From Sphyrna mokarran (lineage: Eukaryota): DNA of 64,000 nucleotides. This document shows, piece after piece, positions 29,468-63,936 of this stretch. The position numbers were made by a program, and so were the translations under genes. The first letter of the stretch is position 1. Each line of letters opens with the position of its first letter. The DNA lies in the NCBI GenBank assembly GCA_024679065.1, contig JAGIQG010000009.1:107322001-107386000 (forward strand), read 5' to 3'. The notes beneath the pieces were generated by a model. It searched no databases and was not told where the DNA came from. It worked only from the letters and a program-made list of their open reading frames with translations.

Positions 29468-32444
29468 TATATGGAGATACAGAGCCAATTTTTGGAATCA
29501 GGGATATCTAACTCGAAACGTTGGCTCTATTCTCTCTCCTCAGACACTGCCAGACCTGCTGAGATTTTCCAGCATTTTAGTTTTGTGTTTGAAAGCCCAG
29601 CGTCTGCAGTATTTTGCTTTTATCTATAACGGCCACAACATCGCTGGGTGTATTTCATTTTAAATAAGGAAAAATCATAATCAGTCACTCCTCAAAATTA
29701 TAATGCCTTTGTGTTAGTTTGTAGAAACGTTCACTAATTTTAAAGATTATCTCATTATTGACTGGCACAATCTTCATTGGTCAGATATGGATCCATGTGC
29801 TATTGTGTTCCCAACACGACAATAGTTGTTAGGCTGAACAGAAAGCATCCTATTTCCTGTTAGGAAAGGAAAAGTAAAATGTGATTATTTCCGTGGCAGC
29901 TTTCGCAAGTGGTATTGAAGATTACCATTTTGTCATGATTTCAGACCTCGACTTGGGTTTTCAGAATGGCAGGGTTTAACTTCCAGCATCCAAGGAGCCG
30001 GTAGGAACATGTCCCTGCTGATGCTGCCTGTCTGGCTGCCATTTAATTCGCCGACAAACGTTAATTGGGGAGGAAATCCCACCTCAGCGAATTGCCGGCG
30101 ATTTGCAGTCAAAAGCGCCAGAGTCTGCACTGGGCAAAACTGGTACTGCAGGCAACAGAGGCAGCCCCATTCCCGGTGTGCCTTGGAGTTCTGGAGATTT
30201 CGGGCACAAAAAGCAACCTTTCGGATCATCGTGCCTGCGCCGGCTATCAAGCGCCTAATTATTCTAATCTCATGATCCAAAACTTGGTTCGTTGCTTGTG
30301 TATGCTATGGCGTTTCAAATAATTCTTAATTGGTGTGAGGTTCCCTCCTCCACCAACCTTTCAGGCAGTGAGTCCCAAATTCACAGAATTCTTCGGAAAA
30401 TAACGGGCTTTTCGCCAAACCTCCCCTAAATCTCTTTCCCTATTCCTTAAATCTATGCCCCATTTATTGATCACTCTCCTAAGGAGAAAGATTCCTCCTT
30501 ATCCAACTTATTTGTGCCCCTCATAATTTTGTACAACTCGGTCAGGACGCCTCTCAACTTTCTCGGCTCCAAGGGAAACAACCCTAGCCTAACCAACCTC
30601 TCTTCATAGCTGAAGCTCACCAAACCTGCCTACACCCTGTTAACACTTATCTGCACTCACTCTATTACAATCACACCCTTCCGATCGTGTGGCAGCCAGA
30701 ACGGTTCTTCAGCTGTGGCCTACGCCTCAACAAATAAAATGCAAGACCAGGTAAGCATGCTGGCCTCAGGCGAGAGTGAGGATTGTGAATCCCAAATAAG
30801 TGTCTGGAGTTAGGGGACGGTGTCAGTCGTAAGATGGGGGTTAAGATGTCGGGAAGTGGGAGCATCTGGGTCGCCACACCTATTTTGGGAGGCTGGAGGG
30901 GACGCCCTATGGTGAAAGAAGGCTGTTAATGGGGTCCCCACCTCAACCGTTTCCAGGTGGAGTCATTACTGAGTTTGCCCCTTTGCTTCTGGTTGTCTCC
31001 CATCAGACTGAAAATTTATATTTCTAATGTTAACACAAATTACATGAATGGTACAAAGTGGGTCGCTGCAACAGGGAAGTGTGTCCGGGTATACAATGCA
31101 GAATCTTCAGTCTCCCTACAGCAACAATGAAGCTGTAACAACCAACGTGGTGCCAAATCGCCACCAGTATTGATCTTGGTGAATGTACAAAGCTAAACTA
31201 TTTAAGGCATCAAGCAAAGTGCTTCACGTCACATTTGAGGCATTGGTTTTTTTTGGATCTGGCGCATTATTGCTCTGTATTTCAGTTAATCTGGTTTAAC
31301 CGGCCTTGCTCTTGTAAATCCAATTTTGAGTACTCAATTGGCCATTAACAAGAGCACATTCTTTGTCCTCCAATGCAGATCTGTTCTTTAACAGTGTATT
31401 CCTTTCGGTCAGCGTTGATTTAATAGTTCCATCCTTAATGCTGTTCAATTTACCCAGCTTGTCCTCTTTACGGTAAAATGAAACATTTGTAACATGACTA
31501 TTCACCATTTGCTGGTTCCAATCAGCCGTACTGCCATTGCAAAATGCAGACACGTCCCTGTGATGGGCCAGAATGAGACACGAGAGCGGGACACTGAATG
31601 ACTTCTTGATTATAAGATTCAGAAAATTGAGACTGGGTGGGAAACGGCTCAATAATTGGCCAATGAAGGGTCTCAATCAGAGCTAGCCGAGGGCTCGCAC
31701 GCCCTATAGAAGAATTGCCGGAGTGGCTGAGGCCGTGCCACGGCGAGAGCAACGTGACAAATAAGTCTCTGTTTGCTGACTGTAGTGTCTATAGAAAAAT
31801 ATCTATCATATCAAGTATTCTTTATGATAAAGGATAACTAATCGAGCTCCTGACATGTCTCACTTACGCTTACTACACGTGCCATACATTCATACATAGG
31901 AACCTATCCTCTACAAAGAAACTGTTCAAGGCTTGCACCTTTAGTTTGGATACCAGCGAGTTTGCTTCGCCTCAATTTCACGTTGCTTTCTCCATGACAA
32001 CGTTTGGGCCAATTGGAGTCGACTTTCCATCTAATGAGCACTCCTTTTCTCTTGTGACATACATTGCTCGCATTGTTTGAAATTTAGTATTTGCCCGAAT
32101 GAGAGCAAAACAAAAAGCTTCCTCTACTTGCCACTACTCTCAGCAACATTCGCTTAATGAAATCCCATTGATATGGAACAGTTTAGCACAAATGTCTCTG
32201 TTTAGTAGAGACCTACCGTTAGTGGGTGCCAGGAATTATTAAATGCCTTCCTTATATATTAAGGAAAATAACGACTAAGTAAATCATTCTCGGCTTAAAC
32301 TCAGCATCCAGGATGTCTGCATTAAAAATAAATCATTTTAGCGCATAAGGCCCCTCCCCCACCCCTTCCCCCGGAACATCAGTTGAAAGCTGAACGGTAC
32401 AGGGAATCACTACTTTTTCAGATATATATTTGATTGCTTAAGAA

Positions 32445-32504
32445 TTATGGAACATCAAACCTGCGTAACTCGTTGTAAATCTTCACATCGTCCAATTCCA
32501 AACC
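32445..32504 (-). CDS. Gene B cytoplasmic exon 2 (second half of ITAM)
   Basis: ttctattttttaacag|GGT TTG..., phase 0, GLELDDVKIYNELR; then either read-through RFDVP* (TAA 32447-32445) or donor CAG|gtttga at 32461. Confidence 0.82.
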   Translation of the reverse strand, partial: GLELDDVKIYNELRRFDVP

Positions 32505-35500
32505 CTGTTAAAAAATAGAAGAAATCTAATTGTTTTAGACAATTCTGTTTACAAAGGCTTGTTTTAATGCATTCAGGATAGCCTGGCAATGTTCTTTACC
32601 GTGTATGCGGAATCCACTTCAGAGTCAGTTTTATTGTTTGAAGAAACTGTAACGAAGTAATAAACGTGGATAAATAAATAACCAAAGAATCTGTTTTGAA
32701 TTGTAGCTATTGCAATGTTGCTTGATAAGGTTGCCTGTTTTGTGACCTTTCTGCCTATCTTCCCTCTATCTTTCTGTCTACCCACTTAAACAATTGTCTC
32801 TCTGTCTATCTATTTCTCACGATATATATTTCTCCATTATACAAATTCTTGGCTGTTAAATGCGAAATAAATCAGGACATTTCTCAAGACTGAACTATAA
32901 CCCCAACAAAGTGCATACATGACCACTTCCGAACCCACTGATAGACAGACACAGATCTTTCCAGCTGATAATGTGATTGTTATCTTATTGCTAGATTTCC
33001 CGGCTGCACCTGCCCCAAAACCGGAATATCGCGCCGAGATCAATTTGCGTTGTGCCGTCCCACCTGCCACGACTCGCATGATGGGCGGGACGGTAAAATT
33101 CCTCTGAAGTGTTCAACTGGCAATTTTTGTAAAAACCACATTGGAAGTCAAGTTATTCTGCTTATATTGGTATGTGGCATGAAAATATTTATTTTATTAA
33201 ACATGGGGGATTGTTAATGACGACGTTACAACAGAATGGGATATAAAAGTAAAGATATTTAAAATAGCTGTACAGGACCTTGTTGAGACTACATCTGGTG
33301 CATTTTGTTCAGCTTTGGACTCTTTCGAAAAAAATTACAATTGCATTAGATGCTGAGCTCATTCCTGGGAGTAAGGGCATATCTTATGAAGAAAGGTTGA
33401 AGGTTCTATTTACTTAATAGAGTCGATGCAGAGGATGCTTCCTCGTGTTCAGGAAGAAGAAGTAAGGGACAACGTTTAATAAAAAGGGGTCTCCCGTCTA
33501 CGAGGAGAAGAGGAGGATTTATTTAACCTCAGAGATACGTTATCACGTGGAATTCTCATTCCCAGAAAACAGTGAATGCAGGGTCATTGAATCTGAGTTA
33601 AGCAGTTCTTTTTTGCTAGACAGGAGAACATTCGGTTATGGGGAGGCAATCGCGAAAAAAGACCTGAAGCAGCAGTATGACTAATCATGGATCTTATGGA
33701 ATGGTGGAACAAGCTGGAAAGGCCGAGTGATAGACTCCCACATCTAACTCTTTGTTCCAAGATGCTGCCCTCCTTTCAAACACAATGCAGAAGAATACAC
33801 AGTATGTTAGCCAATAAGGAATAAGAAATCTAGTAGAAACTACTTCTCACGAACATAGAGGTAACTATCTACCGAAGTTGCGTATGACAATGATTTAAAG
33901 AAATGACAACACATATATTACCAGTTTTCAGGGGTGGGGACCTTACTTTTTATAAGAATACATACCATTGCGTTTCCATTTTAGTTTGCTTGCTAGTATT
34001 TTAAGTAGCAAGATAATTAACACAACAGCTGGCAAGATTATTGTTCTCAACAGTGTAGATATAAATTCAACCCCGGGGTCTAGGCAATTTGACGTCCTTC
34101 CTGAAAATATGAAAAGAAGACCGTGTTTTTGATTTTATGATCCGGCTAATATTAAGGAGCAAAATAATTGTTTTACACAAGATTGTAGAATACGTTTAGT
34201 AGGATACTGTAACTGTATTTGGAATATTTCTTTTCCACAGACATCGGAACGTCTGTCAGTGACCTATGTTCAACATAGCAGAAGAATTAATTGCACGTCT
34301 AAACTCAAGAACAGGGCTCTGGGACGGCATGGTGACACAATGGTTAGCACTGCTGCCTCACAACGCCAGGGACCCAGATTCGATTCCCGGTTGGGTCACT
34401 GTCTGTGAGGAGTCTGCACGTTTTCCCCGTGTCTGCATGGCTTTCCTCCTGGTGTTTCGCTTTTCTCCCATAGTCCAAAGATATGCAGGCTAGGTGGATT
34501 TGGCAAGCTAAATTGCACTTTGGTGTCAGGAAAACTAGCTAGGATAAATGTATGGGGTTATGGAAAGGGGACTGAGTGGGACTGTGGTTGGCGCAGACTC
34601 GTTGGGCTGAATGACCTTCTTCTACACTGTAGGATTCGATGTACATTGTAAGCTTCAGACATGTTGTAAACAACATGCGGTTTGGTTTTGGATCGCAGTT
34701 TTGTACTTTAATGTCAGTTCCAGCCTGTCAAAACTCCTGACCCCAACACCATTGTAGCGATTTAACTCTGTCGCAACCACTTTCGAGATCTCAGGAAACT
34801 CTCTGCGAGCATCAACAAGTAATCGAGTGCTTTGTCCCATCACGTACAGAATCAAATTGTAGCTTAAACTAGTCCTCGAAAAAAACATGCATTTCGAAAG
34901 TGTCTTAACGTCGTAAATAATGGACTTCATGACATGTAGGCCTGACGGAAAACGTGAGGAGGTAGAATAATATCGCAACATTTAGTCTTTACATCTGAAA
35001 TACTTAGTACTTTAATTAAAATAAACGCATTTCTCTATTTAACTTATGTGTGATACTAGTTTAGGTGTTCGTAGATGTAATCATCATCAAGCAAAGCACC
35101 TAAGTGGAGTTACTGAGGAAACGTGTGTGTTGACTTTCTGAGGGCTTCATCACACCACATAATAATAGCGCCTGAGGCTTCTGTATGAAATCGTGCCATC
35201 CGGTTACTTGATTTGATTTGATTTGATTTATTATTGCCACTTTTATTGGTATGCAGTGTTGTTCCCTGCGCGCCACAAAGACAAAACATACCATATTCAT
35301 AGAATTCATAGGAGAAAAGGAAAGGAGAGGGTGCAGAATATAGTGTTACAGTCATAGCGACGGTGAAGTGAAGAATAACTTACTGACAATAACTTAAAGT
35401 AAGTGTTATACTTGTATCAAGTTAACTTTACGCCATCTTATTTAAGGCACCGGTTTCTCTCCTTCGGTCACTCACGTAGTAATGGTCGGGGCTACTTGTG

Positions 35501-38009
35501 TTACAAGATGCACCTCAATTGATTGCATAAACAGTGTAATAGCAGGTAGTCAATTAATTGCACGGCAGTTAGAGCAGAAAATATTGGATCACAACAATTT
35601 AACTCGTGTAAAATTAGTGCAGTTTCTATCATGAAGCATGTTCATAGGTATTACTTACGTATTACTTCCAGATGGGTGCCATTTCCACTTGTCATTCCTG
35701 ATCCCGTTAAGCTTACATGACAGTAGTATGTATCTGAGTCTTTCTCAATCAACCCAGAGATACGAACATGCATTCTGTTGTTGGAAAATGCTTCGCTGTC
35801 TGATGTCTCCAGCCGATCTTTATAAAATGGGCTCTTGTCCAATCTGTAGCCATCTTGTTTATCCCGTGTCCAATAAGTTGCTCCAATTAGGATTTGGCTT
35901 ACTTCAAATTTCAAGGTACAATTCAGTGTCACCGACTCCCCCTCTACTGCCGTTATAGAGGGAGGGAACTGGTAAACTGTGAAATTTATCCTCCCATCTG
36001 TTGGGAAAAACACTTCAACTGTAAGCGAGATAATTACCAAATTCTAGGTGATACCCACAACTTGGGTTGCTAAGCGTAATTAACATCTGATATTATAAAG
36101 ATGGAAAGAAAATTAATAGAACGACGGTTAGCGGAAACGTCAAGTATATAAGCAGGAAGCGTTTCAAAAATATAGCAAACCAGTCAGAATCTGAAACAGA
36201 ATGCCGGTTATTGTTGGGTTGTGTGCGCAGATTTTTGATCAGACCTACCTTGCATTAAGTTGATCTTTTTCTACACCCTAGCTATCAATGCAATACTACA
36301 TTCTGCACTCTCTCACTTCCTTCTCTATGCTTTTTCTGTATAGCACGGAAGAAACAATACCTTCAACTGTTTACAAATACATATGACAACAATAAATCAA
36401 ATCAAACCAGAAAATCAAATTATTCTTTGGATTAGCTGTCAGGATAATGTTGGGTTGTGTTGTTTGATTGCCGCTAACTGACACTAATCCTCAAAACCCA
36501 ATAACAATATGAATTGGAACTAAATCCCAAAAGCCATTTAAGTACACATGGCAGTAATAGGTGTCTGAGTATTTCTCAGCCAAGTCGGAGATGTTAATGA
36601 ATATTCTGTTGTTAGCAAATGATTGTCTGTCCGATCCCTCCAGCCGACCTTTATAAAATGGGCTCTTGTCCAGTGTCTAACCATCTAGTTTAGTCGCGTC
36701 CAAGGTGGTGATCCGATAAGGGATAGGCTTTCATCAATTTCCAAGGCATAGTTCAGCGTCGCCGACTCCCCCTCTGCTGCCGTTAGAAAGGGAGGAACTG
36801 ATAAACGACGAAATTGAGCTCTCCATCTACTGAAATGGGGGCAAATTAATTTTGAAAAGCTACCCGTTCATTTTTCTGTGGTAAATCCAACTACATTCCT
36901 CATCTATAGACACATAGAATCTATATTCCTCCGGGGTGTGTATAAGGCTTACTGTTTCTCTTGATATCTATGAATCATCTCTAATTATCTGTACTTTGAT
37001 ATGTAGGGCAATTTTTCAAATATAATTTGTAGAACGTGTGAATCTCGAAAATGTAGTAAACAATGGGGAGGATTTCAAGATGTAGTCAGACTGGTAAAAT
37101 TGCAGACTCTTGCAAATACCATGTAATGTAGAGAGGCGTGAAGTCTTACAATTAGTCTGGACGATAAGGAGATTAAATATAAGCAGAATGGAGCTATTTA
37201 CCCAGGGCTGCAGGAACAGAGAGACATGCGGAGTCAAGATCAAGTCAGTCGGAAATTAGTGTTCCAGTAAATGCTTATTTAAATGTGATTTAATTAATCC
37301 TGCATTGTTGTCTTGACAGTGTCACGCCTATATGTCTAAATTTAAGGCGGCTTTTAAATAACACTTTACAATGGAAACACACATACCTAATCCAAACCCA
37401 AGCATTATCCACAATGTGGAATATTCACTGAATTCCATATGATTTCCAGAACCTTAGTGTAAGCTGACTCTGTTGCAGCAACATGAGACGCGATACTTAA
37501 AATAAATGGTTGGTAACCGTTAGTTGAAATTTAAAATGTATGCGAGAAAGGGACTTGTAACCTTCATTAATGATGGGGTTCGAATGAAATGTATCAGCAA
37601 TTTGGCTGCCTGATTTGAGAAAAAATGTTTTTCGTTTCTTTATTTCTGTAGCATCTGATATATATATAATATATATATAAGATATACATATAAACTTGCA
37701 TAAAATTATCTTGCAATTTGTGTAAACCATTTCAGATCAATGGTCAAATCAAGGATGCCGAGTCAATGTATGTAAAAAATGGATCAGCATTACTTTTGAG
37801 GAGAACACAACGTAAGCGAATGTCAACCAAAAAGACAATTTTTTATCCTCTTAAATCATACTAAGAGAGCACTGGCAATCTATAAATTACAGTACAATAT
37901 TGGTCCAAGCGTAATGTCACGATCACCTCACCTTTGGTGAAATAACCTCATAATGTGATAAAGGGAAATCCCAGTAAATAGATATTGAAATAATTGTTGC
38001 ATTTACCAT
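32445..38009 (-). CDS. NCR3-like: Gene B (spliced model): NKp30/NCR3-like VJ-type receptor with charged TM and cytoplasmic ITAM. Exons 38009-38007(?), 37207-37150, 35997-35659, 34100-33966, 32646-32600, 32504-32445 (or to 32461 if spliced onward)
   Basis: Phase-compatible GT-AG exons: M-PWVNSSILLIFNLLIVQTN-YGRINFTVYQFPP...YYCHVSLTGSGMTSGNGTHLEVI-RRTSNCLDPGVEFISTLLRTIILPAVVLIILLLKILASKLKWKRN-VSSNNKTDSEVDSAYT-GLELDDVKIYNELRRFDVP*. Confidence 0.8.
32600..32646 (-). CDS. Gene B cytoplasmic exon 1 (first half of ITAM)
   Basis: tacttcgttacag|...TACACG|gtaaag, 47 nt, phase 1 to 0; VSSNNKTDSEVDSAYT. Confidence 0.82.
33966..34100 (-). CDS. Gene B stalk/TM exon with Arg (and Lys) in the TM
   Basis: cttttcatattttcag|...AATG|gtatgt, 135 nt, phase 1-1; TLLRTIILPAVVLIILLLKIL; stalk Cys. 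Confidence 0.88.
34321..34641 (+). mobile_element. HE1/V-SINE-type SINE in the gene B V-TM intron
   Basis: gggacggcatggtgacacaatggttagcactgctgcctcac...ctgtaggattc. Confidence 0.88.
35659..35997 (-). CDS. NCR3-like: Gene B VJ-type Ig V-set domain exon
   Basis: tttttcccaacag|...ATAC|gtaagt, 339 nt, phase 1-1; GESVTLNC, YW, DSDTYYC and germline-joined J-like GNGTHLEV. Confidence 0.93.
36520..36826 (-). pseudogene. Pseudo-V exon paralogous to the B and C V exons, in the leader-V intron of gene B
   Basis: DGELNFVVYQF / TAAEGESATLNY (Cys to Tyr) / LDKSPFYKGRLEGSDRQSFANNRIFINISDLAEKYSDTYYCHV; two frameshifts, an in-frame TAG, no J-like end or donor. Confidence 0.88.
37150..37207 (-). CDS. Gene B probable leader exon (ATG supplied by an upstream exon)
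   Basis: tctctctgttcctgcag|CCC TGG...AAT T|gtaaga, 58 nt, phase 0 to 1, hydrophobic PWVNSSILLIFNLLIVQTN; candidate ATG|gtaaat at 38009-38007. Confidence 0.55.
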
Positions 38010-38018
38010 ATCTTTCAA

Positions 38019-38560
38019 CAATCTCAGACAGGAATCTTACTCCATCATTGGAACTGGGTACCAAATTGTGTATTAATGTGTTTCAGTCTTACATTTTGAC
38101 TTACGGAGTCTTATAAAGTTAACATCAAATGCACGTTGTCTAGAGCACTACATAGTAACAGATTAAATGAAATACAATACTATATGGTGCCAAGTGATGT
38201 AGGCAGACCAATACATAATAACGAATAATATAAGGTAACTAACCAGTAGTTGGAAGAATTAAATCAGTTGTATCAGATACTGAAACTATTATTGCATTTA
38301 TGGTATCTTAAATAACGCATTCGTCAATCTCAGACAGGAATCTGACTCCAACATTGGAACTGACACCAAATTGTGTATTAATGTGTTTCAATCTTATATT
38401 TTGAATTATGGAGTCTTATAAAGTTAACACCAAACGAGATTAGCTAGACCGCTACATAGTAGCAGATTAAATATTGTGTGGCACCAAGAGCAATATATAA
38501 AAATGAATAATATAAGGTAACTAACCGGTAGTTGGAAGAAAGAGAATCAGCTGTATCAGA
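38019..38560. repeat. Diverged tandem duplication (~250-300 bp unit) upstream of gene B
   Basis: caatctcagacaggaatct...gtatcagat occurs at ~38019-38279 and ~38325-38561. Confidence 0.85.
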
Positions 38561-39519
38561 TTAATTTTTCGAATAGAATCCATCGTCAATACAGGGCACA
38601 TTTTGTGCTGTGCTGTTGAAGCCAAGTACTGTCAATATCTTGAGGGCTGATTTCAGCAGTGACATTACTTGTGGGCTTGTATTGACGACACAGCATATGC
38701 AGATTGTGCTGCCACTGAAAGTGAAGTGAATGGTTTGCATTCAATGCGGTTGCGTAATACTGAACACTTTTTTTTACAATTGCACGGGACATGTTACTCA
38801 GGAAATTTAGAGTGGGATAATGCAGGATTTTGCATCTGTCAGTAATGAGTCTTTATAATAAGATGTTCCCTGTTAAATGCTTCTAAAGTGGACATCACTT
38901 CTTTCGGCGTAGCTTCTGACTTGACCGTAAGTGAACTTCGGGCAAGACCATGGGGAATGGAAGAATGCATAATTAAACTTAGTTTTTAAATGTGAATCGA
39001 ATGATATCTTTCTGCTAAAATGCCAGTACAAACAGTGAAAGAACACATTACAATGAAAGTTATTGGACTATGTTATCTTGCATGAAGGTGTAAAGTGCAG
39101 CACCAATCTTATCAACAATAAAAAGATGCCTTCTGAAAAGTTATGTGCTACTTTATGCACTCAATTAGAGAGGTGTCAATGACTTGAGAGCGGTGCTGGA
39201 GTAATAACGAAGAACATATGCTATGCTTTATTTGAGCCTGTTCAGGGGACACATTTAGGGGACACATTTAAAAGATTCTCAGAAAATTTTAAAAAAAGCA
39301 AGTGCTGAAAATATCTTTGGAGAAACCGAGTTAACGTTTTGAGTCCAATATGCAGATTCGGAACAGTCACTCCGTTTCTCCCTCCACTGGTTTTGCGAGA
39401 CCTGCAGAACTTTTTCAGCACTTCGTTTCATTTCAGATTTCCAGCTCCCGTACTACCTTGATTTCGATTTACAGAGAATCGCAAGTTGGATGAAAAATAT
39501 ACAAAAGAAAAATTAAAAG

Positions 39520-39980
39520 GATGTTACCGAGACTGGAAGGCTTCAATTATAAGGAGGGGCAGAAGAAACTGGGACTTTTCCTCCTGGAACATAGGAGGAC
39601 GAGGATAGTGGTTTATAAAATCATGAGAGGCAAATATAAGGTGAATAGCCAAGATCTTTTCCGTAAGATAAGGGAGTCCAAAACTGGACAGCATAAGTTA
39701 AGATGAGAGAAGAAATATTTAGAAACCTGAAGGGCAACCTTTTCATATAGGGGGTGTTGCGGGTATGGCCTGAGCTACTGGAGGAGATATATGGACTGAA
39801 CTGATAGAGTACAACTGCAACATTTTAAAGACATTTGGACAGGTACATGGATGGAAAGATACGTGGAGGGATGTGGGCCAAACGCACGCAAATGAGACTA
39901 GTTCCTTTTAGGAAACTTAGTAGGCATGGATAAGTTGGGCCGAAGTGCCTATTTCCTTGTTGTATATCTCCGTGATTCCA
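39520..39980 (+). mobile_element. CR1-type LINE 3' fragment
   Basis: MLPRLEGFNYKE..KKLGLF.LE.RR, VYKIMRG. Confidence 0.8.
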
Positions 39981-40036
39981 TGATATCTAACCTTTTTCAT
40001 CTTACCTGAAAAATGTAGGAAAGTCATATTAACGGA

Positions 40037-40312
40037 GGGCGGCATGTTGGGACAGTATATGACACCGTTATCACATTGCGCCAGTGATCCGGGTTTGATT
40101 CCTCGCTTGAATCACTGCCTGTGCAATATTTACGCATTCATCCGTGTCAGTGTGGTGCTCCCATTTCTTCCCATAGTCCGAAGGATGTGTTGCTTAGGTG
40201 CATTGGCAATGCTAACTTCTCCCTCAGTGTACCGAATAGGTGAGTAGGGGATTGGCGCAGTCGCTTCGTTGCAATGTTAATGTAAACCAGCTTATGACAC
40301 TAATCAATAAAG
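40037..40312 (+). mobile_element. SINE (alternative tail)
   Basis: Decayed head and core; tail gcaatgttaatgtaaacc..cttatgacactaatcaataaa. Confidence 0.7.
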
Positions 40313-40454
40313 CAAACAATACCGAAGTTCATGGATGTTACCCTTATCATAATGACCATGGATCATTTGGTTGAAGTGGCAGGGTACAATAATACGTTGG
40401 AACTGCTAGACAATGGAAGACAAAGGGTTACTCTGTAACAGGGTTCTTGTGATA

Positions 40455-42000
40455 CCTGTCATCGCACTTAATAATGAAGTTTTGACGAATCGCAACAATC
40501 CATTTCTGTCCTTTGACCCTGACCTGCGACAAAGAAGACACTAGAGATGGGGAGATTTGGAATCAGAGGCCTAAAATAAAACTTGATTGCCAATCCCGTT
40601 AAAATAAAAGCACTTTATTTCCCATTCACCCTCGTGATTATAGTATCATAGAATCCTACAGTGTAGAGGGAGTCGATTCGGCCCATCAAGTCTGCACCAA
40701 CCAGAATCCCCCCCCACGTCCTATCTCCATAACTCTATGTATTTATTCTAGCTAATCCCTCTGACAATAAGGGACAATTTAGCAGAGCCAATCCATCTAA
40801 CACGCACATCTTTAGACTGTGGGAGGGAGACGGAGTACCCGGAGGAAATCCACACAGTCGGGGGTCGGGGGGAGGGGGAGAATGTACAGTCTCCACATAG
40901 ACAGTGATCCAAGCCGGGAATTGAACCCGGGCCCCTGGCACTGTGAGGCAGCAGTGCTGACCACTGTGCCACCGCCCCTCCCCCCTATCACTCAAATGGC
41001 CTAAATCCCAAAATTTAGACATTTAACATAAAACTATCGAGTTTGCAGTTCCATGGACTAATTTGATTTGATTTCTTCATCCATTAGGTAGTTTTTTCAG
41101 CAATTAATTAACGACCTGTTCACGGATTGTTTTTATTCCCTCTTGATTACGTCATTTAATCGATATCACGTATTTTGGTTCCACGCTTCAACATTTTCCA
41201 AATGCCAATTCACTTCGTCCTTTTTTATTGTCTGTAATAATTTCTTCACTTTGGACGTTAGATTTCCTAACTTCGCATGGTCTAAATTCTCCAACCCCTT
41301 TAGAGTTCCAAAATCTTCAATGAATTTCCTTCTAAGTCGTTACTTCTTCAACTCCCATTTCGCTCGTCACAATTCAGTCCCTCCAATTTCTTACTAAATC
41401 TGACTGCTCCTTTCTGTGGCCCTTGAATTACTGTTTTTCTTTCATTGTGCTTAGCTGAGTACACCGGTTATTACAGAATGAAAATGTGGGTTGGACAATC
41501 CTTGTTGTTTATGGCGCGTAACGGACCGTTCTGTTCCCCCAAATCAGACAGCATTCAAACTCACTTACATCAGTAATGTTGTGAGATTTAGTGATACAGC
41601 CCAAAATATTCAGTTGGAAAAGTTGGCATTGGACATTGGGGACGCAGACAATACCGAATTCGTAGCCTTTTTTGCACAGCAGATTTTCTTTTCGGGAAGT
41701 GCTGTAAAATATACTGCATCTTCCAACAACAACAACTTCCGTAATTTTCAGGGAAGGAGGGTGTTGGACTTTGGCAGCTCTGTTCGTTCTTTATAGCTGC
41801 CAATTGATCCTCATATAACTAAATTTTATGCAAACAATATCAGTCCGACTCCGTAAAGGGGGAAGGGGAAGGTGTGGGTGGGCAATAGCTAAGGAGGAGA
41901 GCTGCCGGGGCGGCGGGGTCGTGTGGTATCCATCAGATTACCTTCCGGGCGATAAAGTTGAAAATCTACATCTCGGGAAGATTAAAACATTCAATGGCTT
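40455..42000 (-). pseudogene. Heavily decayed IgSF pseudogene: V-set-like exon (~42000-41569), second Ig-like exon (41454 to ~41150), possible TM-like exon from 40523
   Basis: Motifs recovered across shifting frames: IFPRCRF, KVI*W, GSYKERTEL, SLKITEV, EDA-IFY(S), donor gtaagt at 41568; second exon LEGNSLKILEL...CEV; several stops and frameshifts. Confidence 0.45.
40646..40977 (-). mobile_element. HE1/V-SINE-type SINE
   Basis: Reverse complement gggcggtggcacagtggtcagcactgctgcctcacagtgccagggg. Confidence 0.88.
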
Positions 42001-42640
42001 CACAGAATACAGGCGGATGTGTAAGAATTTGAAAAACAAGTTAAACATGCACATCCCATAGAATCACTCTGCCGAAAATTTTCGCTGCAAGTACACATTA
42101 TATCTGTTTTGTGCAATTTGGCTCTAAATGATATTCGGTAGGGTAATTTTTGATTTGACGCACATTGGAGATGTTAAATCCATTTATTTCTCTCATCTAC
42201 TGTGAGTTTTACTATATCCGGAAGAATTGGAAATAGACCTTTCTCTTCTACGTGACGACGATAGGCCTGCTACGTGACTCAACGCAGCTTAGAACCGAAC
42301 GTGAGTATTGGTAATATTGAAGGCCACAGCAACGCGTTTCGCATCTGCCGCCGTTTAAAATAACGCCTAGAGAAAGTGGGGATAAATTATTTATAAACAT
42401 TTGAATCTGATTGGACAGAAAACTCATCCGCCTCAACATTAAGGCTTGGCGGATGCAGACAGAAGACACAGAAACCAAATACCTAACAAACGTTCATTCA
42501 CTCTTTTGATTTTACCCCATGTCAAGTGGCGTTAAGAAGTGTCACCAGAAGAGAAAATGCTGGAAAATCTCAGTAGGTCTGGCATCTGTAAGGAGAGAAA
42601 AGAGTTGACGTTTCGAATCCAGATGACTCTTTGTCAAAGC

Positions 42641-42795
42641 TTTGACTGTGGGAGGAAACCGGAGCACCAGGAGGAAACACACGCAGACACAGGGAGAATG
42701 TGCAAACGCCACACAGATAGTGACCGAAGCCCGGAATCCAACTCGCGTCCCTGGTGCTGTGAGGCAGCAGTGCTAACCATTGAGCCACCGTGCCA
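42641..42795 (-). mobile_element. HE1/V-SINE-type SINE, 5' half
   Basis: Head and core, joined to a Penelope-like end at 42550-42640. Confidence 0.8.
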
Positions 42796-43312
42796 ACCGT
42801 GGAACTTATTTGTTTGTACATGATCCACATTTCTAAACCTTTTCTGTTAACATTTACCAACGCGGAACATCATCTCTCCGTTTAAGATCAGAAGATGCAA
42901 TCATAATAACTCTTGGCTTAGTCTGAGACTACTTGCTAAATGGTCAGAATTTCAATTTTTTATGCATACGCCTTTATTCTATGAAGTCACCTTTACTGTT
43001 GCAAGCAGATTTAGCAGCTTCGCTGTTAGAGCTTTTTATATTAGATTGGAAGGCCAGAGTGTCACAAATTGCAACAAATGTTAAAGTACGTGATCTGCAA
43101 AAGCAACACTTTCTTGACAATAGATAAATTGCCCCTCAGTGTCAGGAGGACAAGGGTAAATGTTTGGTATTGTTTGTGGGATTGTGGTCAGTGCAGACTC
43201 AATGGACCGAATGGCATCCTTCCGCACGGTATGATTCTATAATGATACTCAATTTTTCATAAAATGTTTGACGTTAGCCAACCATACAGTGGAAGTTCGA
43301 TTAGCCTTTTAG

Positions 43313-43458
43313 NNNNNNNNNNNNNNNNNNNNNNNNNNNNNNNNNNNNNNNNNNNNNNNNNNNNNNNNNNNNNNNNNNNNNNNNNNNNNNNNNNNNNNNN
43401 NNNNNNNNNNNNNNNNNNNNNNNNNNNNNNNNNNNNNNNNNNNNNNNNNNNNNNNNNN
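43313..43458. other. Assembly gap (146 N)
   Basis: Run of n. Confidence 1.
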
Positions 43459-44114
43459 CTGTGTGAGTATGTATGTGTGTGCGCCCATGTGTGTAAATGA
43501 ATATACATATGATACATAAAGCACAAAATTTAATCATGTGAAAGCTTGTTGTGTAACAGCGAGCCCCAATATTTTAGTTAGAGAAGTTGCCTCAATCCGT
43601 TCTTGACTTCCGAGACCACCTGCAGGTCTATGTGCTCACATACAAGCGTTCTTACTCACTTCACTTCTCCTGCGGCCGTGTGCATCTGGAGGATATTATT
43701 AAAGGGAGCTCATACACATATTTTAGCAATGGGTCAATGTTGGTTTCAACGTCTCTTTGCACCTCCCGAGTGCGGGGGGAGGGGGGTGGGGGCGGGTGGC
43801 GGGGGGAAATGCGGATAAGTGGATTGTAGTTCTGGCGGAAGTTAGTTTGGCCTAGCTCTCTCATTCCTGTTTCAGCAAAGGAGGTGAGACAGCTATGCAA
43901 GTATATCATCACATTATTAAAGTGCACGGATCTATATTCAATCTTTCTCATTTACTGAAAATTTTGTTAGCCTTGCTTAATTGCTACTAGCCTACAAATT
44001 TTAATGGACGTTAGAAGGAGGTAAAATTATTTTTACGGAGCGTGTGGATGAACAACATAAATAAAGTAAAATTACGAATGATGCTTTTTCTTTAAGATGC
44101 TTCGGAAACAGAAC

Positions 44115-44150
<36 letters not shown>
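44115..44150. repeat. (TG)n microsatellite
   Basis: tgtgtg...cgcgcg.tgtgtg. Confidence 0.9.
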
Positions 44151-44151
<1 letters not shown>

Positions 44152-59871: not shown

Positions 59872-59929
59872 ATGCCATTAAGTCAACAGCTCACTCTCCT
59901 GCATTTCGTTATCTTTGCAACGCACACCG
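59872..59929 (+). CDS. Gene C leader exon
   Basis: gaagATG...ACC G|gtgagt, 58 nt, phase 1; RUNX-type AACCACA about 95 nt upstream. Confidence 0.82.
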
Positions 59930-62900
59930 GTGAGTTAATTCTATTTTTTTCTGCTTGTGGATGACATCTTTGCACTACAGTAACGTGCTAATTTTAATTG
60001 CAAATTTCGCAGAAGCTGATTTCGGAAAATATTCCCACTTTCCCGTCATCCTTACAGTTTACAGAAGGTTGTTGTACTCATAACGAAATAGCATTCCCAT
60101 TGTATTTAGCAATTAGAAAACGCTCTTCTCGGCAGGATTGCGATTGTTTTCCGGAGTCGAGAACACAGGGATAAAACTTTCCAAAGGTTCCCTCGCTACT
60201 TGGCACTAATTCTGAAGGCTGTTTCTGTTGATCGAGTTTCCGCCGAAATTGCGACGGAAGATGGACAGAACCCGCTAGAGAAATTTCGGGGTATAGTTTT
60301 TATTAACAGCAAGTTGGCTGAGGGACATTGTTGACAATGATTGACAATGAGGTCAGTGCAAAATAGACCATTTGGAAGCATGTTTATATATTTCGACGTG
60401 GGATGGAGAGCTCTACAAATTCACTGCTCTTTATTCATCATTACAAGTATGGTTATCATTTTTAATCGTTATTTTATTTCATTCCTGGGATGTATCCGCC
60501 ATTGCCTTTTGAAGTTTGTGCTCATTCTCAGCCCAAGCTTCTGTGTCAGCCAGGTCTTGCAATTTTGGGATTACCCATATGGAGCGAGGCGGACCAGCAT
60601 AACGAAATATTTGCTTGCAATCACGACGCACGCTCGCACAACCAAACATTAAACTGACAACATAACCCAACAATAACTTGCCCGCACAACCAAACATTAT
60701 CCTGATAATAAAATCCATCATTAACCTGGTAACACAACCCAACATTAACCTGATAACACAACCCAACATCAACATGTCCGCACAACCTGACATTAACCTA
60801 ACAACACAATCCAACATTAATCAAACAACAGCAGCCAAACATTAGTCTGACAACGCCATCTGATATTAGCCTGATAGCACAGACATTGATCTGACAACAT
60901 AACTAAACATTGGCCTGACAGCACAACCAAACATTAATCGGACAACACAACCGAGCATTAGCCTGACAACACAATCAAATATTAACTGGGCAACACAACC
61001 CAACAATAACCGATCAATATAATCCAGTATTAACCGAACGTTACCGGAACAACACAACCCAACATTAATCGAACAATTCAACCAAACATCAACCTAACGA
61101 TACAACCCCGCATTAATCGAACAACATAACTCGACATTAACCGAACAAGTCAACGTTAATTTAATAATCGATCCAAAGAATAATCTGCTCACATAACCCA
61201 ACAATAATCTGACATCCTGTTTAAGATTCTGACTGGTTTGCTAGATATTTCAAATGCTTTCTACTTGTATACTTATATACGTTTCAGCTATCCATCGTTC
61301 TTTTAATTTTCTTTCCACCTCTATAATATAAATTGATAATTAGACTTAGAATCACAAGTTGTGGATAGCATCTAGGATTTGGGAATTATTTCGCTTACAG
61401 TTGAATGTTTTTTTCCAACAGATGGGAGGATGGATTTCACAGTTTACCAGTTCCCTCTCTTTATAACGGCAGCAGAGGGGGAGTCGGTGACACTGAATTG
61501 TGCGATGAAATTTGAAGCAAACCCAATCTTAATCGGAGCAACTTATTGGACACGGGGTGAACAAGATGGCTACAGACTGGACAAGAGCCCATTTTATAAA
61601 GATCGACTGGAGAGTTCGGATAGCAAATCATTTGCCAACAATAGAATATATATTCGTATCTCTAGGTTGATTGAGAAGGATTCAGATACATATTACTGTC
61701 ATGTATCCTCCATTGGATCAGAAGTGAGAAGTGGATATGGTACCCATCTGGAAGTGAGGAGTAAGTAATAAGTAGCAACAAGAGTTCTTTAAAAGCGTCT
61801 CCAATTTTACACAGTGATTCGACTGCCCCGGCCCAGGAACAGCATTGTTTTAATTTGTAGACTGTGATAAATCAACTGACCTCATTGCAGTACAGAAACC
61901 TGGGCGCCATTGATACGCAGATCATTCCAAGTAAATCCGCTGATCATACTAAAATGCTGCACGTCGGAATATATCTGTAATTGTATCTGGGAACGAGACT
62001 GGAGCTGACGCCAACCATTATGTAGAGCACCTGCAGCCTACTATACAACACAATTGGGTATTCCGTTTTCTGGAAGCCAGTTGAAACTAAAATAGAGCGC
62101 AATGGAAAACGGGTTTCTGATGCAATAAAACCTATTTCCATACCCAATGCCGACCAGGCTGAGCTAGGATCCTTTGTTGCTTGGAAGCAAGGAGATCTAT
62201 TGGGCTCAATGTTGAGCATTGCCCTTTGGGAATTTTCAGTGACACCAAAACATCAGGAAGCAGAGGAGAAATACAGGGAGGGCTTGATCATAGAACGCCG
62301 ACAGTGTAGGAGGAGGCCAATTGGCCCACTAAGCCTGCACAGACAACAATCCGACCCAGTTCGTATCCCCATAACCCCACATATTTACTCTGCTAGTTCC
62401 CCAGACACTAAGGGGCAACTTAGCATGACCAATCCATCCAGTACATCTTTCCTCGGATTACCCGGAGGAATCCCACGCAGACACAAGAAGAACATGCCAT
62501 CTCCATAGAGTGACCCAAGTTGGGAATCGAACCCAGATCCCTGGTGCTGTGAGGCAGTAGCGCTAATCACTATGTCACCATGCCGCTCCAATGACGAGAG
62601 AGCAGGCAGAAATGTCTAGAGGTAGAAGGAGGCATTTAGACACGGCCCCTTACACTGAATTGCTACTAGGAGCGCACTACAGTCGCAAATCATCCAGATT
62701 CCATTTCTATTTTAGTCGTTATAGCACCAGCCCAGGACACATTATTTTATTTTATTTGATTTATTATTGTCACATGTATTGTGATACAATGAAAATATTT
62801 TTCTTGCGCACTATATAAACAAAATATACCGTTAATAGAGTATACAGTGGAGAAGAAAAAGAGAGAATGCAGAATATAGTGTTAGAGTCACAATGAGGGT

Positions 62901-63936
62901 GTAGAGAAAGATCATTTAATATGTGATGGAACCATTCACAAGTCTGATGACAACAGAGAAGAAGCTGTTCTTGAATCAGTTGGCACGTGTTCTCAGACTT
63001 TTGTCTTTTTCCATACGGAAGAAAGTTGAAGAAGTATGTCCAGTGTGTATGGAGACCTTGATTATGCTGGCTGCTGACCTGAGACAGCGGGAAGTGTAGA
63101 CGGAGTCAGTGGATAGGAGGTTGATTTGTGGATTACACTCGCGACCCTTTGTAGTTTCTTGCAGTCTTGGTCAGAGCAGGAGACATAAAGCACAAAAATC
63201 CAGGTTGGCTGTCCAGTGTCAAATGGAGGTAATGCTGCACTGTTGCAATGGAGGTGAGGACTATTATACTAACGTTGAACCTGGTGAATGTAAAAAATCC
63301 CATTGCAATTTCAAGACAGATACCCCCATGTCCTGGCCAAAAGCTGCTCCTCAATCACCATCTTAAAACAAAAATAAATTGCTGAGTTTTGCATTGTTAT
63401 TTTTGTAAGCTTCCTGTACGCAAATCACTTGCCTTTCCTAAATTGCAAAAGTGGCTGCTCTTCCAAAATCTTCACCCGGCTTTAAAGTGAATTGGGATGT
63501 ACTGAGGTCGTACAAGGCGCTGTAGAAAGCAAATTGTTATTTATGTGTATAAATTTACAATCGTGCCTTTCCAAAAATGCAAACAACATCAGATCAAAAT
63601 TTTAAAATTTAGTTTCATTTCTTTATTCCAGAGAAAAATAACAGGAATCCTTCCCCGATACTTGGACTGGGAGGTGCTTCAGTTTTGCTGAGTATAACCG
63701 TCATTTTTCTTATATGTGGACTCTGCTGGCAAAACAAAGGTGTGTGTTCCTGTCAAACCTACTTTAGTAGTATGTTTTCGCTATAGGGGCAGTTGCTCTA
63801 CTGCTATGAGATCTAACCAGGTAAATGCTTCCAACGAACTTGTCACTTTTTTTGTGTGATCGGAAACCCGATTAGTATGAGCAATTATTTTAAAACACGC
63901 CATTTCCTTCAGAATTATACAACTGTTCCAATTTAG
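59872..63936 (+). CDS. NCR3-like: Gene C (spliced model, 3' end unresolved): NKp30/NCR3-like VJ receptor with neutral TM. Exons 59872-59929, 61422-61760, 63632-63739, then uncertain tail
   Basis: Phase 1 junctions give MPLSQQLTLLHFVIFATHT-DGRMDFTVYQFP...YYCHVSSIGSEVRSGYGTHLEVR-KKNNRNPSPILGLGGASVLLSITVIFLICGLCWQNK. Confidence 0.8.
60630..61215. repeat. Degenerate ~24-bp minisatellite in gene C intron 1
   Basis: Unit ~acaacacaacccaacattaacctg repeated >20 times; explains the spurious (MLGCVVRL)n ORFs. Confidence 0.9.
61422..61760 (+). CDS. NCR3-like: Gene C VJ-type Ig V-set domain exon
   Basis: ttttttccaacag|...AGGA|gtaagt, 339 nt; canonical Cys/Trp/DxxxYYC and J-like GYGTHLEV. Confidence 0.93.
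62290..62586 (-). mobile_element. HE1/V-SINE-type SINE in the gene C V-TM intron
   Basis: Reverse-complement head, core and tail. Confidence 0.85.
63632..63739 (+). CDS. Gene C neutral TM exon
   Basis: tttctttattccag|...AAAG|gtgtgt, 108 nt, phase 1-1; ILGLGGASVLLSITVIFLICGLCW, no charged residue. Confidence 0.82.

What the first reader, a model, noticed from the sequence alone, without database searches (positions are those of the whole stretch)
32445..34100. Receptor with both a charged TM and its own ITAM, split by an intron as in FcRgamma/CD3 adaptors
Seen: joining 32646-32600 to 32504 across a 95-nt phase-0 intron gives DSEVDSAYT|GLELDDVKIYNEL, a full D-xx-YxxL-x7-YxxL ITAM. The TM has Arg (TLLRTIIL) and Lys. 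Known: ITAMs of FcRgamma/CD3-type chains are typically split by an intron within the first YxxL; FcRgamma reads YTGL and CD3zeta has YNEL. Receptors with basic TM residues normally lack ITAMs and borrow them from adaptors. Inference: a natural VJ-domain/ITAM fusion, either ancestral or made by capturing adaptor exons. Read-through of the TM donor gives a short tail (NGMYSYKK*), i.e. a possible classical adaptor-dependent isoform.
Basis: partly seen in the sequence, partly recalled or inferred. Interest (0 to 1): 0.85.

Follow-up and report, generated by a model that had tools for sequence, protein, structure and literature searches.

The report
Shark NKp30-like receptor with own ITAM
A shark gene related to the natural-killer receptor NKp30 appears to carry both the charged membrane residue that normally recruits a signalling partner and, on two small downstream exons, a complete activation motif of its own, but no RNA or orthologue evidence could be obtained to show that these exons are used.

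Summary
On the minus strand lie a leader candidate (38583-38526), a VJ-type Ig exon (35997-35659), a transmembrane exon with Arg and Lys (34100-33966), and two micro-exons (32646-32600; 32504 onward). Across a 95-nt phase-0 intron these two read D-x-x-YTGL-x7-YNEL. All exon phases fit.

The Ig domain is NKp30 (NCR3)-like. Human NKp30 is the best solved-structure match, and the nearest proteins are shark "natural cytotoxicity triggering receptor 3" entries. A paralogue 25 kb away, with a 76% identical V domain, has an uncharged TM. Its Mustelus orthologue has an ITIM tail. The two therefore look like an activating/inhibitory pair.

In-phase ITAMs of this quality arose in 6 to 127 of 2000 shuffles. 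The second-half exon is the only one of its kind in the window.

Splicing and conservation therefore remain untested.

I read it as a new variant of a known kind. Receptors with an ITAM in their own tail exist in teleosts and hagfish. Unchecked first-stage notes report similar two-exon ITAMs elsewhere in this genome.

The parts
38526..38583 (-). Candidate leader exon. It has an ATG, 19 codons (MDSIRKINLIQLILFLPTT) plus 1 nt, and donor G|GTTAGT in phase 1.
   Evidence: It was the best of 4 hits in a scan for ATG plus hydrophobic core plus phase-1 GT donor over 36000-46000, minus strand. It has the same length as the leader of the paralogue at 59872-59929, and its ATG and donor align with that leader without gaps. 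tblastn with the Mustelus protein did not find it.
36530..36830 (-). Pseudo-V exon lying inside the leader-V intron. It is broken by frame shifts and a stop.
   Evidence: tblastn hits fall in two frames with an in-frame stop. It is 76.8% identical over 271 nt to the paralogue's V exon. Sequence read.
35659..35997 (-). VJ-type Ig V exon, 339 nt, phase 1 to phase 1, with YYC and a GNGTHLEV J-like end. NKp30-like.
   Evidence: Pfam V-set E=1.2e-13. The 4 best PDB sequences are human NKp30, E about 2e-9. It is 61-63% identical to catshark and nurse shark NCR3 entries. dN/dS against the paralogue V is 0.54.
33966..34100 (-). Stalk plus transmembrane exon, 135 nt, phase 1 to phase 1. It has a stalk Cys, an Arg in the outer third of the TM, a Lys near the inner boundary and a basic stop-transfer stretch.
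   Evidence: Read, translated. It is the only TM-like hydrophobic segment on the minus strand in 30900-34200. Its Arg aligns with the Arg of a Heterodontus NCR3-like TM, weakly (E=0.044 for the single comparison).
32600..32646 (-). ITAM exon 1, 47 nt. It enters in phase 1 and ends in phase 0 after ...DSEVDSAYT.
   Evidence: Acceptor pyrimidine fraction 0.71. Donor ACG|GTAAAG.
32505..32599 (-). 95-nt phase-0 intron that splits the first YxxL after Y-x.
   Evidence: The position matches the rule for classical ITAMs stated in PMC4536121.
32448..32504 (-). ITAM exon 2: GLELDDVKIYNELR..., with a stop at 32447-32445 if read through. There is a weak possible donor (CAG|GTTTGA) after 32461.
   Evidence: Acceptor pyrimidine fraction 0.82. 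It is the only such exon in the window at the strict acceptor setting. The nearest A[AT]TAAA on this strand is about 1 kb downstream, at 31424-31419.
59872..63739 (+). Neighbouring paralogue, the presumed inhibitory partner. Leader 59872-59929, V exon 61422-61760, uncharged TM exon 63632-63739. Its tail exons lie beyond the window.
   Evidence: The V exon is 76% identical in protein to the V exon at 35997-35659. V is 85% and TM 89% identical to Mustelus asterias LOC144497821 (P0155), whose tail has two ITIM-like motifs.

Best explanation
This is an intact activating member of a shark NKp30 (NCR3)-like paired-receptor cluster. One VJ-type Ig domain sits on a short Cys-containing stalk. The transmembrane helix has an Arg in its outer part. 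The short cytoplasmic tail is encoded by two micro-exons that together form one classical ITAM.

Inferred mechanism. Ligand binding clusters the receptor. A Src-family kinase phosphorylates the two ITAM tyrosines in its own tail, and a Syk/ZAP-70-type kinase docks through its tandem SH2 domains. The TM Arg, shared with mammalian NKp30, may additionally recruit an Asp-bearing FcRgamma/CD3zeta-type dimer, or be needed for surface expression. The neighbouring paralogue, with a 76% identical V domain, an uncharged TM and (by orthology) an ITIM tail, would be the inhibitory counterpart.

Shown: exon anatomy, phases, splice motifs, family of the Ig domain, and rarity by chance. Inferred: splicing, expression, signalling and adaptor binding.
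For: Exon anatomy and phase continuity hold from leader to V to TM to ITAM1 to ITAM2. The Ig domain is V-set, with human NKp30 as the best solved relative, and the nearest proteins are named NCR3 in sharks. There is only one TM-like segment upstream of the ITAM exons on that strand. Shuffle tests gave 6 to 127 of 2000. The second-half exon is the only one in 128 kb of real sequence at the strict acceptor setting. The ITAM and TM exons are not part of a repeat seen elsewhere in the window. The split position agrees with the published rule for classical ITAMs (PMC4536121). V-exon dN/dS of 0.54 against the paralogue argues against long neutral decay of both copies.
Against: There is no transcript evidence: no RNA run was listed, so read laying could not be used. 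No homologue with this tail was found. None of the NKp30-like proteins retrieved has a canonical ITAM. The regex hit 3 of 153 proteins, and none of the 3 is a single-V NKp30-type protein. The further shark proteins read by eye have ITIM-like tails. The TM-exon search was blank. A Mustelus orthologue of this gene did not appear in the profile search, although the orthologue of the neighbour did. The duplicated block shared with the paralogue covers only the V exon and its flanks, and a broken V exon lies between leader and V. There is no poly(A) signal within about 1 kb after the stop, and the optional last donor is weak. A second, poorer first-half exon (32852-32821, ending Y-I) also completes the motif, which shows that first halves are easy to find.
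Confidence: 0.57

Rival explanations
1. It is a conventional adaptor-dependent activating NKp30-like receptor. Transcripts end shortly after the TM exon (the read-through tail NGMYSYKK, or another unrecognised exon), signalling goes only through the TM Arg and an FcRgamma/CD3zeta-type partner, and the two ITAM exons are unused sequence.
For: Mammalian NKp30 works this way (PMC6514059). No RNA support exists for the ITAM exons. No homologue has such a tail. The ITAM regex and half-motifs are not rare in themselves.
Against: The in-phase, well-spliced, acidic ITAM arose in only 6 to 36 of 2000 shuffles at the observed site quality. It is the only such second-half exon in the window, and it sits 1.5 kb downstream of a receptor TM exon on the same strand. 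The split position is the classical one.
Confidence: 0.25
2. It is a decaying partial duplicate (pseudogene or silent gene). The V exon was copied without its leader, next to a broken V exon, and the locus is not expressed as a protein whatever its downstream exons encode.
For: The block shared with the paralogue is only 636 nt around the V exon. A frame-shifted V exon lies 0.5 kb upstream. The leader candidate is divergent and was missed by tblastn. No orthologue is annotated.
Against: All five exons are open with usable splice sites and matching phases. The leader candidate matches the paralogue's leader in length, ATG and donor. V-exon dN/dS is 0.54 and the exon is slightly more conserved than its flank, 86.3% against 82.6%.
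Confidence: 0.14
3. The ITAM exons belong to a separate small adaptor gene (FcRgamma/DAP12-like) that happens to lie downstream of the receptor gene.
For: The motif resembles adaptor ITAMs, and the exon structure is the adaptor type.
Against: No other TM-like segment exists on that strand between 34200 and 30900, so such a gene would have no membrane anchor within that span. The phase of ITAM exon 1 fits the receptor's TM exon.
Confidence: 0.04

Closest known systems
Mammalian NKp30 (NCR3)
   Same: A single VJ-type IgV domain with a GxGT J-like end; it is the best solved-structure match. It has an Arg in the transmembrane segment (PMC6514059).
   Different: Per the same review, mammalian NKp30 has no signalling motif and relies on CD3zeta/FcRgamma. 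Here a full ITAM is encoded downstream. Identity was not printed; the E-value is about 2e-9.
Annotated shark NKp30-like proteins (nurse shark NCR3 P0004, Mustelus asterias P0155, Heterodontus P0157/P0163, catshark P0001/P0003)
   Same: The V domain is 58-79% identical and the leader-V-TM exon plan is the same.
   Different: All have ITIM-like tails and, except Heterodontus P0023/P0163, uncharged TMs. None has an ITAM.
Teleost NILTs with an ITAM (carp NILT1, trout NILT2), and the few ITAM-bearing NITRs
   Same: These are V-type Ig receptors that carry their own cytoplasmic ITAM. Their gene tables show a small penultimate exon (44-59 nt) before the last exon (PMC3022915, passages and table).
   Different: They have a different Ig lineage (NKp44-like fold according to that paper). 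A basic TM residue combined with the ITAM is not described in the passages I saw.
Hagfish NICIR3/ALA
   Same: An IgSF receptor with ITAMs in its own tail (PMC3634110, passages).
   Different: It has V plus C domains, two ITAMs, and is from a jawless vertebrate. No relation to NKp30 was shown.
FcRgamma / CD3 / DAP12 / CD79 signalling subunits
   Same: [quoted passage not shown]
   Different: Those chains have an acidic TM residue and little or no ligand-binding ectodomain. This gene has a basic TM residue and a full V domain. Sequence relatedness of the exons could not be tested: the 20-residue search was blank.
Dual-feature receptors: NKp44 (TM Lys plus tail ITIM) and chicken CHIR-AB
   Same: A charged TM residue together with a tyrosine motif in the same chain (NKp44: PMC6514059; CHIR-AB 'bifunctional': abstract start only, PMC3601082).
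   Different: In those receptors the motif in the receptor's own tail is inhibitory. Here it is an activating ITAM.

Membership tests
NKp30 / NCR3 family | Single V-set Ig domain of non-rearranging VJ type (YYC ... GxGT-L-V) | tested here: met
   Pfam V-set E=1.2e-13. The J-like GNGTHLEV was read, and aligns to human NKp30.
NKp30 / NCR3 family | Closest relatives are NKp30 rather than other V-set proteins | tested here: met
   The 4 best of 1363 PDB sequences are NKp30. The best database proteins are named NCR3 or NCR3-like in sharks. No tree was built.
NKp30 / NCR3 family | Basic (Arg) residue in the transmembrane segment | tested here: met
   Read. The feature is stated for the mammalian protein in PMC6514059.
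NKp30 / NCR3 family | Cytoplasmic tail without a signalling motif (mammalian definition) | tested here: not met
   The gene model ends in a canonical ITAM. Annotated shark members have ITIMs, so this feature is not general outside mammals.
NKp30 / NCR3 family | Location in the MHC class III-type region; binding to B7H6 | not tested
   Only an unchecked first-stage note places AIF1 about 60 kb away (s1-886599). Ligand binding is not testable here.
Classical ITAM | D/E/N-xx-YxxL/I-x7-YxxL/I | tested here: met
   D-S-A-Y-T-G-L, 7 residues, then Y-N-E-L across the splice. The consensus is as given in PMC4536121.
Classical ITAM | [quoted passage not shown] | tested here: met
   A 95-nt phase-0 intron follows Y-T. 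The rule is stated in PMC4536121. The splice itself is predicted, not observed.
Classical ITAM | Tyrosine phosphorylation and tandem-SH2 (Syk/ZAP-70) recruitment | not testable with these tools
   This needs biochemistry.
ITAM-bearing transmembrane signalling subunits (FcRgamma, CD3, DAP12, CD79) | Acidic TM residue and a minimal or accessory ectodomain | tested here: not met
   The TM has Arg and Lys and no acidic residue, and a full V domain lies upstream. It is therefore not an adaptor.
Paired activating/inhibitory receptors | Closely related ectodomains on an activating and an ITIM-bearing chain encoded side by side | tested here: inconclusive
   The V domains are 76% identical and lie 25 kb apart. 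The partner's TM is uncharged. Its ITIM tail is inferred from the Mustelus orthologue only, because its tail exons lie beyond the window.

The most novel reading that the evidence does not exclude
This is an expressed NKp30-family receptor that signals in two ways at once: through an ITAM in its own tail, and through a TM Arg that still recruits FcRgamma/CD3zeta-type dimers. It would be either a survivor of the undivided state before ligand-binding and signalling chains separated, or a natural exon-capture fusion of an adaptor's ITAM cassette onto a receptor. If the unchecked first-stage notes are right, it would be one of several such receptors with their own ITAM in this shark genome.
Probability: 0.2. 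Interest if true: 0.75.

Novelty: new variant of a known kind. Interest (0 to 1): 0.5.

Why it matters
Activating immune receptors of jawed vertebrates usually divide the work: a ligand-binding chain with a basic TM residue, and a separate ITAM-bearing adaptor. How and when that division arose is an open question. An NKp30-lineage receptor in a cartilaginous fish that has both the basic residue and a classical two-exon ITAM would be a concrete test object. One could ask whether the Arg is still needed, whether the ITAM exons share ancestry with FcRgamma/CD3 exons, and whether shark NKp30 clusters evolved activating members in a different way from mammals. The value is limited for two reasons. 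IgSF receptors with their own ITAM are already known in teleosts and hagfish. And the present case is a gene model without RNA or orthologue support.

Tried and rejected
RNA evidence. The look-up of sequencing runs on 32300-36100 listed no run, so read laying was never called.

Protein searches.
- The V ORF search gave 3 hits from 9 candidates.
- The representative search gave 165 hits, of which 150 were listed.
- The profile of 11 sequences gave 15 hits from 6297 candidates.
- The TM-exon ORF search gave 0 hits from 1 candidate.
- None returned a protein with this TM and tail.

The length window of the search for homologous proteins means that longer or shorter relatives could have been missed. 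The 50% clustering of the representative library hides close variants.

The 20-residue ORF around ITAM exon 2 found nothing in the PDB at E up to 10.

Exons were searched apart.

Rejected readings. A separate adaptor gene was rejected because there is no second TM. Repeat-derived exons were rejected because the only repeat in 31400-34200 is 31400-31924. An ITIM-type tail downstream of this gene was rejected because tblastn with the Mustelus protein found only V, TM and leader hits. In that call, the rows of the 4 other query proteins in the script were not printed.

Literature. Searches returned no paper describing an ITAM-bearing NKp30 in cartilaginous fish. However, the two key papers on cold-blooded NKp30 are not held and I saw nothing of them beyond their titles in reference lists. 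These are Flajnik et al. 2012 Immunogenetics and Ohta & Flajnik 2015 Immunol Rev. The claim of novelty is therefore provisional. Supplements were not consulted. The exon-boundary figures of PMC4536121 are not held, so the exact Y-x split in FcRgamma/CD3 genes rests on that paper's sentence and on recall. The motifs YTGL for FcRgamma and YNEL for CD3zeta are recalled, as in the finding, and come from no call.
Full report
What is there. The window is eukaryotic, about 40% G+C, with one 146-nt run of N at 43313-43458 that I left alone. On the minus strand I read the following.
- A V exon at 35997-35659, 339 nt, with acceptor ccaacag| and donor ATAC|GTAAGT.
- A stalk/TM exon at 34100-33966, 135 nt.
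- A 47-nt exon at 32646-32600.
- A 95-nt intron.
- An exon beginning at 32504.

The phases fit throughout. The V exon leaves 1 nt, which with the first two of the TM exon makes an Arg codon. The TM exon leaves 1 nt (G), which with the first two of the 47-nt exon makes a Val codon. That exon ends in phase 0 after ...DSEVDSAYT, and the next begins GLELDDVKIYNELR. This is a canonical D-xx-YxxL-x7-YxxL motif.

After the motif the frame either runs on six codons to a stop at 32447-32445, or uses a weak donor (CAG|GTTTGA, GT at 32460-32459). The nearest poly(A) hexamer on that strand is about 1 kb further on, so the 3' end is undefined.

Completing the gene. The DNA shared with the paralogue on the plus strand is only 636 nt around the V exon, at 83% identity, so the leader had to be sought separately. 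I scanned 36000-46000 on the minus strand for an ATG, a hydrophobic core and a phase-1 GT donor. This gave 4 hits. The one at 38583-38526 has the same length as the paralogue's leader (19 codons plus 1 nt), and its ATG and ACCG|GT.AGTTA donor align with it without gaps. Between this leader and the V exon lies a broken V exon (about 36830-36530) with frame shifts and a stop. No other TM-like segment exists on this strand between 34200 and 30900, so the ITAM exons have no other membrane anchor to belong to. The TM and ITAM exons are not part of any repeat detectable within the window.

Is it chance? The bare ITAM regex is common: it occurs 10 times in the six frames of the window, all hydrophobic junk. 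What is rare is the context. I enumerated every way to reach an ITAM in the TM exon's phase, through one or two GT-AG exons, in the 2.5 kb downstream. The real sequence gives two ways. The other is a poorer first half at 32852-32821 joined to the same second exon. Among 2000 dinucleotide-preserving shuffles, at least one such configuration occurred in 127 with loose criteria, in 36 with acceptor pyrimidine content as observed, and in 6 when D/E at -3 was also required. On the real window, both strands, the exon at 32504 is the only one that starts x-L/I-x6-8-YxxL/I behind a YAG acceptor with at least 60% pyrimidines. There are 9 with lax acceptors. With the same strict acceptor, the two other phase-0 split positions give 2 and 3 hydrophobic candidates.

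What family. The V exon is a V-set domain (E=1.2e-13). Against all PDB sequences the four best of 1363 matches are human NKp30, E about 2e-9, with the J-like GNGT aligned. The nearest database proteins are shark entries that UniProt or NCBI name natural cytotoxicity triggering receptor 3 or NCR3-like. They include catshark (63%), nurse shark (61%), Heterodontus, Heptranchias, Chiloscyllium and Pristis.

The plus-strand paralogue has its leader at 59872-59929, V at 61422-61760 and TM at 63632-63739. Its V domain is 76% identical to ours and its TM is uncharged. It is 85% (V) and 89% (TM) identical to Mustelus asterias LOC144497821, whose tail has two ITIM-like motifs. The window therefore comes from a shark related to, but distinct from, Mustelus (inference). 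The two genes look like an activating/inhibitory pair. dN/dS between the two V exons is 0.54.

Evidence against. Among 153 retrieved proteins, 3 match the ITAM regex. They are a catshark two-VJ protein with an ITIM-like and an ITAM-like motif (P0040), a catfish CD22-like protein, and a teleost protein in which the match lies in an Ig domain. None is a single-V NKp30-type protein. The further shark NKp30-like proteins, read by eye, have ITIM-like tails. Only the Heterodontus protein P0023/P0163 has an Arg in its TM, aligned with ours at a weak E=0.044, and it too has ITIM-like motifs. The profile search found the Mustelus orthologue of the neighbouring gene but none of this gene. The TM-exon search was blank.

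Comparison with what is known. A review states that NKp30 has an IgV domain and a TM Arg that pairs with CD3zeta/FcRgamma, and that the NCR tails lack signalling capacity, except for NKp44's ITIM (PMC6514059, passages). [quoted passage not shown] The present exon pair follows the first rule, while the chain has the opposite TM charge and a real ectodomain. It is therefore not an adaptor, but a receptor carrying an adaptor-type cassette. Receptors with their own ITAM are known:
- Teleost NILTs, with a small penultimate exon of 44-59 nt in their gene table, and a few NITRs (PMC3022915).
- Hagfish NICIR3/ALA (PMC3634110).

I found no description of an ITAM-bearing NKp30 in cartilaginous fish. The two papers most likely to hold one were not available.

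Other notes of this scan. Unchecked first-stage notes describe this window as a paired NKp30-like cluster (s1-886394). They place AIF1 about 60 kb away (s1-886599). They list other two-exon ITAMs on other pieces of this genome (s1-887232, s1-887025, s1-887740, s1-887198). I could not read those loci and use the notes as leads only.

Verdict. The most likely reading is an activating NKp30-like receptor with an ITAM in its own tail in addition to the family's TM Arg (confidence about 0.57). The main rival is that the ITAM exons are not used and the gene is a conventional adaptor-dependent receptor (0.25). Next is a silent duplicate (0.14). Whether the cassette is ancestral or captured is open. 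It is a new variant of a known kind, of moderate interest until a junction-spanning transcript or a conserved orthologue is shown.

Noticed in passing
window 36530-36830 (-): A broken V exon lies inside the leader-V intron of the gene. It has frame shifts and a stop, and is 76.8% identical over 271 nt to the paralogue's V exon.
   Followed up: partly
window 59872-63739 (+): A second NKp30-like gene with an uncharged TM. It is the orthologue of Mustelus asterias LOC144497821 (ITIM tail), and its tail exons lie beyond the window end.
   Followed up: partly
window 35062-35100 (-): Behind a TAG acceptor, in the V-TM intron, lies a short ORF reading GALLDDDYIYEHLN then a stop. It resembles the second ITAM exon (tblastn E=1.5; sequence). 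It may be a relic of a duplicated cassette, or chance.
   Followed up: partly
window 34083-34088 (-), within the TM exon: There is a Cys in the short membrane-proximal stalk (...SNCLDPG...), which could form a disulphide-linked dimer as in CD28-family receptors and adaptor chains. This is inference only.
   Followed up: no
window 13139-13399 (+): An ORF with only the C-terminal half of a V-set domain (Pfam E=0.0039). A first-stage note describes it as a half-deleted V domain.
   Followed up: no
window 31400-31924 versus 14-522; 34325-34633, 40645-40981 and 62287-62589: These are dispersed repeats. One is a 539-nt pair at 67% identity just downstream of the gene. The other is a roughly 300-nt element present at least three times, whose ORFs share a recurring peptide.
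   Followed up: no
P0040 (Scyliorhinus canicula LOC119975535), P0165 (Heterodontus francisci): These publicly annotated shark multi-VJ receptors have tails that carry an ITIM-like motif followed by an ITAM-like Y..L-x6-Y..L (catshark) or a near-ITAM (Heterodontus). This suggests that activation-type motifs in the receptor's own tail may be commoner in shark VJ receptors than annotation indicates.
   Followed up: partly
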